DNA of 64,000 bases from positions 186,001 through 250,000 of the IMG/VR virus record IMGVR_UViG_3300017917_001342. The stretch is one strand, 5' to 3'. The first letter of the stretch is position 1. Each line of letters begins with the position of its first letter. Positions 52,007 to 56,484 of this stretch are shown piece after piece. A program made the position numbers and the translations under genes. The notes under the pieces are model-generated. The model was not told the origin of the DNA and made no database searches. It worked only from the letters and a program-made list of their open reading frames with translations.

Positions 52007-52705
52007 TTAAGAAATAACTTCTACGTCTATGTGTTTTTCTTTTGACGTAAAGATTTCGTCCGGATACAGGTGGTGTTCACGACGATTGCGTTCTTCGTCT
52101 TTGAATCCGATCCCCATGATAAGCAGTATGTTGCCTTTTACACCTAGCAATTCTTGAACTTTTGCTACGTCAAAACATTGGCAGCAACCTGTTGAGTAAC
52201 CCATGAGTGATGCAGTGAGGTTCATATAACCTGCTGCAATACCAACTGCAATAGAACGATCTCGCTTGTAATCTTCTGACAACATAGTAACAAGTTGTTG
52301 CTTGTCATTGTCGTAATATTCAAGATGCAAACCTGTTACACGTTCGCTCATCACCTGGTGATATGCAGCCGCTGCGGGACTGTGTTCTAGGTCTTCGGCA
52401 TTGAAATCTTCTACTAACACAACTAATAGATTTGCTAGTAATTGTGCCTGAGTCTTCATGCTGAATTCGCTAGTGTGTTTGTTAACCACACCGCCCAACA
52501 TAGAAGTGTCATGAATTTGTCTAATAAGGTCTCTATTTGTTACAAATATAGGTTTATAAAATGTAACGTTTTGCTTAGACGGGCATTCAGTTACAGCAGT
52601 CTTAATTACTTCTAGATCTTCTTCGGGGATTGATTTTGAGAGATCCCAATTGCGTTGGCAACGCTGGCTGCGACGCACTGCCTTTATCAATGTTGTGTTA
52701 TCCAT
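52007..52705 (-). CDS. Nitroreductase-family protein
   Basis: RRSQRCQRNWD...IPEEDL, CPSKQN, LTASLMGYSTG, LLIMGIG; TAAATA upstream at 52740 and 52755. Confidence 0.8.
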   Translation of the reverse strand: MDNTTLIKAVRRSQRCQRNWDLSKSIPEEDLEVIKTAVTECPSKQNVTFYKPIFVTNRDLIRQIHDTSMLGGVVNKHTSEFSMKTQAQLLANLLVVLVEDFNAEDLEHSPAAAAYHQVMSERVTGLHLEYYDNDKQQLVTMLSEDYKRDRSIAVGIAAGYMNLTASLMGYSTGCCQCFDVAKVQELLGVKGNILLIMGIGFKDEERNRREHHLYPDEIFTSKEKHIDVEVIS

Positions 52706-54739: not shown

Positions 54740-55291
54740 TTACCATACATCCCAGATATGTTTCTTACCAAGGTAGGTATCTGGATAGGGAAGATGATCC
54801 CAGTCTTCGTCTTTAAGAATACGACGTTCAAGTCGACGAACAGCATTGCGCACAGTTTCTTTGCTGAGAGTTTTGTACGCAGTGTTGCATCCAGTTTCGT
54901 TCCAATAGCCATCGCGGGTAAGTTTTGCATACTTGCGCTTAGCTTCGGCAATTTCTTTATCAACATCAATGGGAGCATTTTCATAACGATATTTGCTCAC
55001 ATAGTATTTGTATTTTTCAGGCAGCGCACGAAGATAGCAGTCGTACATAACGCTGCCAGGATTAGTGTGACAGTACCAAAACTGTTTACGAACTGCACGG
55101 CAGTCAGCTTCGTAGCGTGCATTGGCAGCAGCAAGATCACGCTGATATTCGGCGTCGGTCTTGCGAATTTTGATTTGTGTAGTTAGTTCGCCGTAGCGAT
55201 GGTAACGACGATACAGCCAGTTGAGTTCGTCGTTGACGAATGCAACTTCAGTCTCGTAGCGAGACTTGGGTTTACGGTAAGTTCTGCTCAT
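54740..55291 (-). CDS. Basic Arg/Tyr-rich hypothetical protein
   Basis: MSRTYRK... with an AAGGAG RBS inside a hairpin. Confidence 0.8.
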   Translation of the reverse strand: MSRTYRKPKSRYETEVAFVNDELNWLYRRYHRYGELTTQIKIRKTDAEYQRDLAAANARYEADCRAVRKQFWYCHTNPGSVMYDCYLRALPEKYKYYVSKYRYENAPIDVDKEIAEAKRKYAKLTRDGYWNETGCNTAYKTLSKETVRNAVRRLERRILKDEDWDHLPYPDTYLGKKHIWDVW

Positions 55292-55294
55292 TTT

Positions 55295-55349
55295 GACTCC
55301 TTTTAAGCTAGATAGCTTAGAAGTCGTCGTAAAACTTTCTATAGTGCAT
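55295..55349 (-). promoter_or_regulatory. Leader peptide (MHYRKFYDDF*) plus RBS-sequestering hairpin
   Basis: uORF 55349-55317 with its own AAGGA RBS; GACTTC-TAAGCT...AGCTTA-AAA-GGAGTC stem covers the downstream SD. Confidence 0.65.
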
Positions 55350-55412
55350 AGTCTGTTCCTTTTTGTTATTAATCAAACATTAGCAAAAAGCTGTAGTTAA
55401 TGCAAGAAAAAT

Positions 55413-55679
55413 TTAATATCCTAGACGTTCACAAAGTGCATCCATGCCGGTTGTAGTACCTTTGATTTCGGGTAGTGCTTGCCAGCGGCGATATTGTTTA
55501 CACAATTCAACAGTGCCGTTTTGTAAACCAGCTGTATTGGTTTCTATCGCTGTAGATTTGTCTGTCTTTGTAAACACAGTACGATGGTATGCAGTGTCAG
55601 CTATGTAAAAACACAAGTTGATACCAGCTAAAAACAATACTAACAGTATTGCATCTAGTGGGTCGTTCTTTTTATGCAT
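55413..55679 (-). CDS. Small membrane-anchored protein
   Basis: MHKKNDPLDAILLVLFLAGINLCFYIA; start reassigned. Confidence 0.6.
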   Translation of the reverse strand: MHKKNDPLDAILLVLFLAGINLCFYIADTAYHRTVFTKTDKSTAIETNTAGLQNGTVELCKQYRRWQALPEIKGTTTGMDALCERLGY

Positions 55680-55680
55680 T

Positions 55681-55923
55681 TTAGTTACCGTTATCCAGTT
55701 GTTGACATTGTGCATTAAACACAAATCGTTGATAGTCGTCAGCTTTAGCATTGAGAAACGCTAGTGTTTTGTCAATGCTGTCTTTGCTATACTTGTCAAA
55801 TGCTTCTTTTTTAGACCACTCTTTAATGTCATTGGTTACAGCACTGTAGGCATCTTGAAACATCTCTAATACACGGTTTGCATCTTTTTCTGTTTCAACA
55901 TCTACATACACACGATATGCCAT
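55681..55923 (-). CDS. Hypothetical protein
   Basis: AGGAGG RBS. Confidence 0.75.
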   Translation of the reverse strand: MAYRVYVDVETEKDANRVLEMFQDAYSAVTNDIKEWSKKEAFDKYSKDSIDKTLAFLNAKADDYQRFVFNAQCQQLDNGN

Positions 55924-55944: not shown

Positions 55945-56484
55945 TCATGCTGCCATACGGTTAGCACCAAGAGCGTCGCTAACCTTATAGCGTTCAAACA
56001 TTTTATGTTCTTTTGTGCCAAATTCAAACGGATTTGCAGCATTAGATTCAACAGCTTTGCGCACAGTTGCCTGCATAGCACGATTGGCAGCAGCTTTGGC
56101 AGCGCGAAGTGCAGTTTTGCTAGGACCTTCTTTGAAATTGCCTTTTTGAACAATGTCAACGAACCGTTCAACAGGACGAACACCACGTGCCTGATTGCAG
56201 CGATTGCAGCTCATTGCAAAGTTTTCCCAAGTGTCAGTACCGCCTTGGCTGCGCGGTGTAACATGCTCGATAGTTGCGCTGTTGTGTTTGTTGGATTCAG
56301 GTACACAGTGCTGGCCACACCAGCAGCAACGCCAGTTTTGTGCTTCTGCAAGACGTACACGCATGTAGACCTTTTTAGCAGACATGTAAGCCAGTTTGGC
56401 CTTAAAACCTTCGCCCGGATATTGCTTTTTCCAATAAGCTTTAGTGGGCTCTTCGGTGATAACAAACGGGACTTCGAACTTCAT
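55945..56484 (-). CDS. HNH endonuclease (Zn-binding, McrA-type core)
   Basis: CCWCG...ATIEHVTPRSQGG...N...CNRCNQARG. Confidence 0.88.
   Translation of the reverse strand: MKFEVPFVITEEPTKAYWKKQYPGEGFKAKLAYMSAKKVYMRVRLAEAQNWRCCWCGQHCVPESNKHNSATIEHVTPRSQGGTDTWENFAMSCNRCNQARGVRPVERFVDIVQKGNFKEGPSKTALRAAKAAANRAMQATVRKAVESNAANPFEFGTKEHKMFERYKVSDALGANRMAA

What the first reader, a model, noticed from the sequence alone, without database searches (positions are those of the whole stretch)
54740..55405. Leader-peptide translational switch controlling a basic MSRTYRK protein
Seen: promoter, then RBS, then a 10-codon uORF MHYRKFYDDF*. Its last codons and stop form the 5' arm of a hairpin (55295-55325) whose 3' arm contains the GGAG SD of the downstream gene. 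Established: ribosome position on leader peptides controls SD accessibility in translational attenuation. Inference: the gene is translated only when a ribosome reaches or lingers at the uORF stop. It may therefore sense translation or termination stress, and the Arg-rich product may act on ribosomes or RNA.
Basis: partly seen in the sequence, partly recalled or inferred. Interest (0 to 1): 0.6.

Follow-up and report, generated by a model that had tools for sequence, protein, structure and literature searches.

The report
Conserved leader-peptide switch in huge phages
A 10-codon mini-gene and an RNA hairpin that hides the ribosome-binding site of the next gene are really there, and the same cassette is kept in many giant phages, so it is very probably a translational switch built on a previously undescribed leader peptide.

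Summary
The window is part of a 518.6-kb phage genome. On the minus strand lie a candidate promoter, an SD, a 10-codon uORF (MHYRKFYDDF, 55349..55317), a -13.6 kcal/mol hairpin (55328..55295) and the 183-aa gene (55291..54740). The hairpin's 5' arm is the last sense codon plus the stop codon. Its 3' arm covers the AAGGAG SD.

No other gene in the genome has this layout. All 14 protein-anchored loci of homologues, down to about 30% identity, carry a 10-11-codon uORF plus a hairpin. Eleven keep the core RKFYDD[F/L], with synonymous changes and all three stop codons. The stem covaries.

The same cassette also precedes an unrelated small Cys-rich basic protein. In relatives both genes often sit beside tRNA arrays and RNA-repair genes.

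Best reading: a ribosome on the last leader codons or the stop melts the hairpin and licenses translation of the main gene, and the conserved nascent peptide sets the dwell time. The signal sensed and the protein's function remain unknown. No expression data exist. No paper or Rfam family describes it. It is a new variant of leader-peptide translational attenuation.

The parts
55400..55405 (-). Candidate -35 hexamer, TTGCAT
   Evidence: Read. Invariant in six homologous loci. Only 3/6 to the consensus and not called by the scan.
55377..55385 (-). Candidate extended -10, TGc + TAATGT, 17 nt after the -35
   Evidence: TGCTA is invariant in six loci. Genome-wide the motif is only weakly enriched, 47 against 32 in the reversed control.
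55357..55361 (-). Shine-Dalgarno of the leader ORF (AAGGA), 7 nt before its ATG
   Evidence: An SD-like motif lies 5-10 nt upstream of the uORF start in nearly all of the 38 cassettes listed.
55317..55349 (-). Leader ORF of 10 codons plus TAA, peptide MHYRKFYDDF
   Evidence: The core RKFYDD[F/L] is conserved upstream of homologues. Synonymous variants exist.
55314..55328 (-). 5' arm of the hairpin: the last three sense codons (the anti-SD CUUC lies in the last two), the stop codon and 3 nt after it
   Evidence: Folds. Covariation.
55310..55313 (-). Hairpin loop, AUCU
55295..55309 (-). 3' arm of the hairpin, overlapping the SD of the main gene
55297..55302 (-). Shine-Dalgarno of the main gene (AAGGAG), 5 nt before its ATG and partly paired in the hairpin
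54740..55291 (-). Main gene, 183 aa, basic. The N-terminal MSRTYRK and C-terminal PYPDTYLGKKHIWDVW motifs are the best-conserved parts. Function unknown.
   Evidence: No Pfam family. AlphaFold2 pLDDT 79.6 with no PDB match.

Best explanation
This is a cis-acting translational switch of the leader-peptide type.

The mRNA probably starts at its own promoter about 20 nt upstream of the leader SD. It carries a 10-codon leader ORF with its own SD. In free mRNA a hairpin pairs the last leader codon (CUUC of GAC-UUC) and the stop codon with the AAGGAG SD of the 183-aa gene, so 30S subunits cannot load there.

A ribosome decoding leader codons 8-10 or sitting on the stop has the whole 5' arm inside its mRNA channel. 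The helicase boundary lies about +11 nt from the P-site, so the SD is freed. The main gene is then translated either by the same ribosome re-initiating 21-27 nt downstream or by a new 30S.

The nascent chain [H/R/K]-[Y/F]-R-K-F-Y-D-D-[F/L] is exactly the 8-9 residues nearest the peptidyl-transferase centre at that moment. I infer that it acts inside the exit tunnel to slow elongation or release, and so sets how long the SD stays open, possibly in response to a signal.

Shown here: the parts, their conservation, stem covariation and peptide-level constraint. Inferred: translation of the uORF, the pause, the direction of regulation and any signal.
For: 1. Anatomy in the window.

2. Protein-anchored loci, which are unbiased with respect to the leader. 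All 14 loci with DNA carry a 10-11-codon uORF ending 19-27 nt before the main ATG, plus a hairpin. Eleven have the core RKFYDD[F/L], although the main proteins fall to 29-34% identity.

3. All 38 distinct cassettes fold into a hairpin of -9 to -17 kcal/mol that pairs the stop codon and the SD.

4. Cognate arms fold better than chimeric arm pairs, -11.8 against -8.75 kcal/mol, permutation p < 1e-4.

5. On alignment A3, 87% of cells are paired, 6 of 9 pairs change on both sides, and 0 of 500 shuffles reach this.

6. The ORF itself is selected. The start is ATG or GTG, an SD is nearly always upstream, and the in-frame stop is always present but varies among TAA, TAG and TGA with compensating partners.

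7. There is peptide-level constraint. Synonymous variants include AGA to CGA or AGG, AAA, TTC, TAT and GAT, up to four per leader. In the unbiased set, codons 4-9 show 4 synonymous changes against 1 conservative change (D to E), where about 13% synonymous is expected by chance (my count).

8. The cassette is portable. The same leader and hairpin precede an unrelated 48-74-aa Cys-rich basic protein.

9. It is unique in its own genome.

10. Short leaders that arrest at a stop codon are an established class, for example PepNL and NanCL (PMC11890864).
Against: There is no experimental or expression evidence. No RNA run holds the region, so neither uORF translation nor a pause is shown.

One relative (L101) keeps the hairpin and a 10-codon uORF, but in another frame and with an unrelated peptide. 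Two others (L004, L068) carry a different conserved leader, MK[F/Y]W[V/M]NYDSD. Plain coupling can therefore work without this particular peptide.

Synonymous sites of the leader core are more conserved than those of the equally conserved MSRTYRK codons: third-position entropy is 0-1.05 bits, against 0.8-1.6 for the six codons after the ATG. Some constraint therefore acts at the nucleotide or codon level.

In the MAKSP-type cassettes the stop lies only 20-26 nt from the main ATG. A ribosome arrested on the stop would clash sterically with an incoming 30S. That favours re-initiation, or a pause one to two codons earlier.

The large metagenome set was found with a pattern that demanded the peptide, so it cannot by itself prove purifying selection.
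Confidence: 0.6

Rival explanations
1. Hungry-codon or tRNA-damage sensor. The leader works like a classical attenuator. Ribosomes stall at particular codons, above all Tyr7-Asp8-Asp9 next to the hairpin, when the matching tRNAs are uncharged or have been cut by host anticodon nucleases. The stall opens the SD and switches on a protein linked to tRNA or RNA repair.
For: - Geometry: a stall with codon 8 or 9 in the A-site frees the anti-SD while leaving room for a 30S (inference).
- Tyr7-Asp8 is the only part shared by the two leader classes, RKFYDDF and W-x-NYDSD.
- In relatives the cassette lies in or beside phage tRNA arrays.
- In relatives it also lies next to HAD_SAK_2, RNA ligase, PNK-like kinase, Macro and PTH2 genes.
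- Most synonymous changes stay within one tRNA's decoding range.
- From general knowledge, Tyr, His, Asn, Asp, Lys and Arg tRNAs are the classic targets of anticodon nucleases.
Against: There is no run of a single regulatory codon. R4, K5 and F6 are as conserved as Y7, D8 and D9, yet a stall there cannot reach the hairpin and would block expression. Changes that switch tRNA are tolerated: AGA to CGA, D to E, F to L. In this genome the gene is 107 kb from the tRNA array and the HAD_SAK_2 gene.
Confidence: 0.15
2. Plain obligatory translational coupling, with the decapeptide conserved for another reason. For example it could be a trans-acting micropeptide made in fixed ratio with, or binding to, the basic downstream protein. 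The hairpin would only ensure that the main gene is read after the leader, with no pause and no sensing.
For: The hairpin-plus-uORF layout survives in L101 with an unrelated peptide, and in L004 and L068 with a different one. The peptide has a basic head and an acidic tail, and both downstream families are very basic. Each of five near-complete genomes has exactly one cassette and exactly one of the two families.
Against: A free 10-mer with a specific function is unusual. The same peptide would have to serve two unrelated partners (hhalign probability 0.15). The conserved part is exactly the C-terminal 8-9 residues, as expected for tunnel contacts, while residue 2 and the length vary.
Confidence: 0.15
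3. An RNA-level element. The invariant stretch AGAAAGUUUUACGACGACUU would be a binding site for a protein or RNA, or part of a riboswitch-like fold, and the reading frame would be incidental.
For: Synonymous-site conservation in the leader exceeds that of the neighbouring conserved codons. Most cassettes share the identical 20-mer.
Against: - Leaders with 3-4 synonymous changes exist (L059, L062).
- The start codon, its SD and an in-frame stop are nearly always kept although their sequences vary.
- AGA to CGA keeps Arg through a first-position change.
- No Rfam family matches.
- Outside the hairpin the leader is not unusually structured.
Confidence: 0.06
4. A chance uORF and a chance hairpin with no function.
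For: Short ORFs and small hairpins are common in AT-rich intergenic DNA. The whole-leader fold is not significant.
Against: The layout is conserved in 38 distinct cassettes from many metagenomes, the stem covaries, and the locus is unique among 276 SD-led ORFs in the genome.
Confidence: 0.01

Closest known systems
Translational attenuation of cat-86, cmlA and ermC by leader peptides (from general knowledge; ErmCL and erm leaders appear in the papers listed)
   Same: A short leader ORF with its own SD. A single hairpin sequesters the SD of the regulated gene. The leader's 3' codons form the 5' arm, so a ribosome held there frees the SD. The leader is 9-19 codons and the peptide sequence matters.
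   Different: There is no sequence similarity. The gene regulated is not a resistance gene and no antibiotic inducer is implied. Here the stop codon itself lies in the stem and the anti-SD is the last sense codon. The setting is a huge phage, and the cassette is shared by two unrelated genes.
Leader peptides that arrest at the stop codon: TnaC, SpeFL, PepNL and NanCL (PepNL and NanCL: PMC11890864)
   Same: Very short ORFs upstream of a regulated gene, with a conserved peptide acting in the exit tunnel. PepNL is 14 aa, ends in Asp, needs no inducer and has stem-loops around its stop and the downstream SD.
   Different: PepNL arrest is specific to UGA and RF2 and is relieved by read-through. The phage leader uses TAA, TAG and TGA interchangeably. 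Arrest is not demonstrated here. TnaC acts through Rho-dependent transcription termination, which is not suggested here.
toiL, the uORF of topAI-yjhQ that senses ribosome-targeting antibiotics (PMC12121999, listed; I saw only the abstract)
   Same: A bacterial uORF proposed to sense general translation stress through ribosome stalling at specific codons.
   Different: It has a different peptide and belongs to a chromosomal toxin-antitoxin operon. Details were not compared here.
Hairpin-mediated translational coupling in phages, such as MS2 coat-replicase and T4 late genes (from general knowledge; review PMC12548453 listed)
   Same: Translation of an upstream frame melts a structure that hides the downstream ribosome-binding site.
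   Different: In those cases the upstream frame is a full-length gene whose sequence is constrained by its own function. Here it is a dedicated 10-codon ORF with a conserved peptide.

Membership tests
Leader-peptide translational attenuation (erm, cat, cmlA type) | Short leader ORF with its own ribosome-binding site directly upstream of the regulated gene | tested here: met
   uORF at 55349..55317 with AAGGA 7 nt upstream. The same holds in nearly all of the 38 cassettes.
Leader-peptide translational attenuation (erm, cat, cmlA type) | mRNA secondary structure that sequesters the SD of the regulated gene | tested here: met
   -13.6 kcal/mol hairpin pairing the SD. Covariation: 87% of cells paired, 6 of 9 pairs with changes on both sides, 0 of 500 shuffles. 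Cognate arms beat chimeric arms, p < 1e-4.
Leader-peptide translational attenuation (erm, cat, cmlA type) | Leader codons overlap the sequestering arm, so ribosome position controls the structure | tested here: met
   The 5' arm is the last sense codons plus the stop in every cassette.
Leader-peptide translational attenuation (erm, cat, cmlA type) | Peptide-sequence-dependent ribosome stalling on the leader, usually needing an inducer | not testable with these tools
   Indirect evidence only: the peptide core is conserved through synonymous changes. No toeprint or ribosome-profiling data exist, and no RNA runs hold the region.
Stop-codon arrest peptides (TnaC, SpeFL, PepNL) | Arrest with the stop codon in the A-site and inhibition of the release factor | not testable with these tools
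   The geometry is compatible. Use of all three stop codons argues against dependence on a single release factor.
Stop-codon arrest peptides (TnaC, SpeFL, PepNL) | Sequence homology to a known arrest peptide | tested here: not met
   No paper holds the peptide or its sub-strings. It does not resemble the leaders I recall from general knowledge.
Transcription attenuators (trp, his, phe leaders) | Run of regulatory codons plus alternative terminator and antiterminator hairpins with a U-tract | tested here: not met
   No codon run. The hairpin is followed by AAAAGGAGUCAAAAUG with no U-tract. No terminator was called on the minus strand.
Programmed bypassing or frameshifting that fuses the uORF to the main ORF (T4 gene 60, prfB type) | Fixed frame relationship, or matched take-off and landing codons | tested here: not met
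   The stop-to-ATG gap varies from 20 to 27 nt, so the relative frame is not conserved. There is no matching landing codon in the window.
Described structured RNA families (Rfam 15) | Match to a covariance model | tested here: not met
   Only two chance-level hits, E = 2.5 and 8.1.

The most novel reading that the evidence does not exclude
This would be the first phage-borne sensory ribosome-arrest peptide. It is a portable 60-nt cassette (leader x-RKFYDDF plus an SD-hiding hairpin) that huge phages place in front of either of two unrelated basic proteins at a tRNA and RNA-repair locus. On this reading it reports the state of host translation, for example tRNA cleavage by a defence nuclease, failure of release or recycling, or a metabolite, and switches on a counter-measure only then.
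Probability: 0.25. Interest if true: 0.85.

Novelty: new variant of a known kind. Interest (0 to 1): 0.74.

Why it matters
Regulatory leader peptides are known from bacterial resistance and metabolic operons. A leader conserved across giant phages has, as far as the literature searches here show, not been described.

The peptide is only 10 residues long and is conserved more tightly than the proteins it controls. It is attached to a simple single-hairpin output, so it is an unusually clean object for toeprinting and cryo-EM.

If it arrests ribosomes, it adds a new tunnel-interacting motif. It would also point to a condition that huge phages monitor during infection.

Its link in relatives to tRNA arrays and 'Swiss-army-knife' RNA-repair genes gives a handle on two wholly uncharacterised protein families. 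The cassette could also serve as a compact synthetic coupling or sensing part.

Tried and rejected
**Searches that found nothing**
- blastn of the region against 50,697 phage records: no match.
- Pfam and PHROGs for the main protein: nothing, or only families of unknown function.
- AlphaFold2 model (pLDDT 79.6). Foldseek against PDB gave no hit with E <= 0.001. VIA-align wide gave only generic helical-hairpin matches, Z up to 5.3.
- ESM Atlas: only unnamed viral clusters.
- PDB profile search: weak hits, Sds3 at E = 0.004 and bS18 at E = 0.46, treated as chance.
- MAKSP family: no Pfam or PHROG. Its model was too poor (pLDDT 57) to search.
- Rfam: nothing.
- RNA evidence: no RNA run holds the region. 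The one run guessed to be RNA laid no contigs, so transcript ends and expression could not be assessed.

**Ideas considered and rejected**
- Genome-wide enrichment of the promoter motif is weak, 47 against 32 in the control. Support for the promoter therefore rests on conservation only.
- Alternative pairing of AGAAAG (codons 4-5) with the CUUCU arm gives only 4 bp and is not kept in the UUA-UGA variants.
- Macrolide-type '+x+' arrest at K/R-Y-R lies too far upstream to open the hairpin.
- Also rejected: bypassing or frameshift fusion, a transcription terminator, and homology between the two downstream families.

**Not run**
- The large representative protein search was not run. The claim does not rest on absence of relatives, and that library carries no names.
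- The complex predictor was not used. The peptide is below its 30-residue minimum.

Full report
**1. Where we are**

The window is bases 186001-250000 of a 518,643-bp virus record with direct terminal repeats, so it is a huge phage. Its GC content is 40.7%, and it carries 55 tRNA genes and a tmRNA. DNA runs that hold the region are pond and freshwater metagenomes. Window positions 42.7-60.3 kb form a block of small minus-strand genes. No public phage record is similar at the DNA level.

**2. The observation**

The minus strand reads as follows:

- The upstream gene ends at 55413.
- TTGCAT lies at 55405..55400. After 17 nt comes TGc-TAATGT at 55385..55377.
- AAGGA lies at 55361..55357.
- The 10-codon ORF MHYRKFYDDF, ending in TAA, lies at 55349..55317.
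- A hairpin spans 55328..55295.
- AAGGAG lies at 55302..55297, and the ATG of the 183-aa gene is at 55291. That gene ends at 54740.

The hairpin's 5' arm is CUUC-UAA-GCU, which is the end of the last two sense codons, the stop codon and three further bases. Its 3' arm is AGCUUAAAAG, running into the SD. An outer GAC/GUC helix closes over GGAG.

The 40-nt segment folds at -13.6 kcal/mol, z = -4.9. The full 131-nt leader is not exceptional (z = -1.4).

In a mechanical scan of the whole genome, this is the only one of 276 SD-led ORFs of at least 80 aa with such a uORF-plus-hairpin layout. The leader core occurs once in the genome.

**3. Conservation, using the unbiased sample**

The 183-aa protein has 54 relatives, all unnamed, mostly 182-188 aa or 163-168 aa. 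The N-terminus MSRTYRK and the C-terminus PYPDTYLGKKHIWDVW are the best-conserved parts.

I fetched DNA for loci found through the protein alone and read the upstream regions. All 14 loci have a 10-11-codon ORF ending 19-27 nt before the main ATG, followed by a hairpin that pairs the SD.

- Eleven loci have the core RKFYDD[F/L]. These include loci whose main protein is only 29-34% identical to the query.
- Two loci (L004, L068) share a different leader, MK[F/Y]W[V/M]NYDSD.
- One locus (L101) has a 10-codon ORF in another frame with an unrelated peptide, but keeps a 10-bp SD-hiding stem.

In six loci with at least 50% protein identity, the promoter elements TTGCAT and TGCTA are invariant while the spacer varies.

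**4. A wider sample**

I scanned IMG/VR and the metagenome collection for the exact 20-mer of the core and for a back-translated pattern. Together with the loci above, this gave 38 distinct cassettes.

- All fold into a stop-plus-SD hairpin of -9 to -17 kcal/mol.
- The uORF start is ATG or GTG, nearly always with an SD-like motif 5-10 nt upstream.
- The length is 10-12 codons.
- Residue 2 or 3 is H, R, K or N.
- The stop is TAA, TAG or TGA.

Hits of the degenerate pattern that are not followed by a stop lie inside long ORFs and are chance.

**5. The stem is selected**

Swapping 5' and 3' arms between cassettes weakens the fold, from -11.8 to -8.75 kcal/mol on average, permutation p < 1e-4.

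On MAFFT alignment A3, a 9-bp consensus helix is paired in 87% of cells, and 6 of 9 pairs change on both sides. For example, the second and third stop-codon bases pair as A-U, G-C or G-U. No shuffle out of 500 reaches the observed values, and slid registers drop to 32-70% paired.

The anti-SD is always in the last sense codons. UUC or UUU pairs with GAA or AAA of the SD region. In the second leader class, UCC-GA pairs with CGGA or GGAG.

**6. The peptide is selected, and so, partly, are its codons**

Leaders with synonymous changes exist. L059 has AGG-AAA-TTC. L062 has TTC-TAT-GAT-GAT. Others have CGA, TAT, GAT or TTT. That search could only find peptide-preserving variants, so I counted changes in the protein-anchored set only.

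In codons 4-9 there are four independent synonymous changes and one conservative D to E. About 13% of random single-base changes would be synonymous (my count). F to L occurs at codon 10, together with a compensating change in the stem.

At the same time, the third positions of the leader core are less variable than those of the equally invariant MSRTYRK codons: 0-1.05 bits, against 0.8-1.6 bits for the six codons after the ATG. Some constraint on codon or RNA sequence therefore also exists.

**7. The cassette is portable**

The same leader and a hairpin (CUUCUAGG...CCUAGGAG) precede a second family. This is a protein of 48-74 aa beginning MAKSP, with an invariant C-x-C-C-x-C...H cluster. It is unrelated to the first family (hhalign probability 0.15).

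A protein-anchored search for this family found the leader only in its closest members. One of those has YEDF. More distant members start directly after tRNA genes without a leader.

Five near-complete genomes of 195-518 kb each have exactly one of the two families.

**8. Context**

In relatives the cassette lies inside or beside phage tRNA arrays. It also lies next to genes for HAD_SAK_2 ('Swiss Army Knife RNA repair'), RNA ligase, PNK-like P-loop kinases, Macro, NUDIX and PTH2. HAD_SAK_2 follows both the MSRTYRK gene (L010 and the loci of P0021 and P0026) and the MAKSP gene (L018).

In the window's own genome the association is lost. HAD_SAK_2 sits in the tRNA array at 133.5 kb, and the cassette sits at 241 kb with its own promoter.

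**9. Mechanism**

Established knowledge: the ribosome unwinds mRNA about 11 nt downstream of the first P-site base. An SD locked in a stem blocks initiation. Leader ORFs whose 3' part forms the anti-SD arm give ribosome-position-dependent expression, as in cat, cmlA and erm.

Applied here: a ribosome with codon 8, 9, 10 or the stop in the A-site has engulfed the anti-SD (positions -4 to +5 relative to the stop). A ribosome at codon 6 or earlier has not.

The main gene should therefore be read only on mRNAs whose leader is being translated to its end. How much is read should depend on dwell time there.

The residues conserved are those within 8-9 positions of the C-terminus, which is the part in the upper tunnel. 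That fits a cis-acting pause or arrest peptide. Short leaders arresting at stop codons are documented (PepNL and NanCL, PMC11890864).

All three stop codons occur, so a mechanism specific to one release factor is unlikely. In MAKSP-type cassettes the stop lies only 20-26 nt from the ATG. I therefore favour either re-initiation by the terminating ribosome or a pause at Y7, D8 or D9.

Everything in this section beyond the anatomy is inference.

**10. Rivals**

- **A tRNA-availability or tRNA-damage sensor.** It is attractive because of the context and the shared Tyr-Asp. It does not explain the conservation of R4, K5 and F6.
- **Plain coupling with a trans-acting micropeptide.**
- **An RNA-level binding site.**
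- **Chance.**

Transcription attenuation, bypassing or frameshift fusion, and known Rfam families were tested and not met.

**11. Function of the product**

Function is unknown. There is no Pfam family and only PHROGs of unknown function. The AlphaFold2 model (pLDDT 79.6, alpha/beta with low-confidence, strongly conserved termini) has no convincing structural neighbour. A bS18 resemblance at E = 0.46 is noted only as a lead.

**12. Novelty and limits**

No paper in the library contains the peptide or its fragments. Searches for phage uORFs or arrest peptides returned only bacterial and eukaryotic systems.

The mechanism class is known. The peptide family, its phage setting and its modular use are not.

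The limits are these:

- There are no expression or biochemical data.
- The host is unknown.
- The unbiased sample is modest.
- The pattern-based sample is biased towards the peptide.

Noticed in passing
G000 genome 129519-129593 (outside the window): A tRNA with anticodon CUA, which ARAGORN labels 'Pyl'. It is a potential amber suppressor inside the phage's 50-gene tRNA array. Many related cassettes end their leader with TAG, while this genome uses TAA. Read-through of the leader stop could matter, as it does for PepNL.
   Followed up: no
G000 genome 119.6-164.8 kb and 311343-311751 (outside the window): The 518-kb phage carries 55 tRNA genes, mostly in one 45-kb array, and a tmRNA with tag ANDNVAPSYALAA. 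It also has three RNA-ligase genes and one HAD_SAK_2 gene.
   Followed up: partly
L018:12188-12391, L022, L023, L035 and others: A small basic protein family of 48-74 aa, MAKSP...NINMRGKK...CWCCxC...H, with no Pfam or PHROG. It typically sits directly after tRNA genes in huge-phage tRNA arrays, and in L018 it overlaps the start of a HAD_SAK_2 gene.
   Followed up: partly
L003:2900-2935: The leader SD follows, after 4 nt, a sequence ending ...GGTTCGATTCC...CCACCA. This looks like a tRNA T-arm plus acceptor end that ARAGORN did not call. In several relatives the mRNA 5' end may be made by tRNA processing rather than by a promoter.
   Followed up: no
L018:11903-12140, and the same region in L021-L024, L039 and L061: A conserved non-coding block (...GCAGGGGTAA[A/G]AG[T/C]CC[C/T]AAT...) of about 250 nt lies upstream of the MAKSP-type cassette. 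It has no ORF and no significant Rfam match.
   Followed up: partly
window 55945-56484 (-): An HNH endonuclease gene (Pfam HNH, 1.8e-10) lies two genes upstream of the cassette. The same order HNH, two small genes, cassette is kept in L007 and L008.
   Followed up: partly
window 52007-52705 (-): A nitroreductase-family gene (Pfam 7.4e-12) lies five genes downstream. It is syntenic in L007, in L101 and in the locus of P0002.
   Followed up: no
window 55413-55751 (-): The upstream 112-aa ORF is partly replaced in related contigs. Read laying shows joints at 55405/55428 and 55512/55712, with other DNA in between. The region just upstream of the promoter is therefore a variable spot.
   Followed up: no
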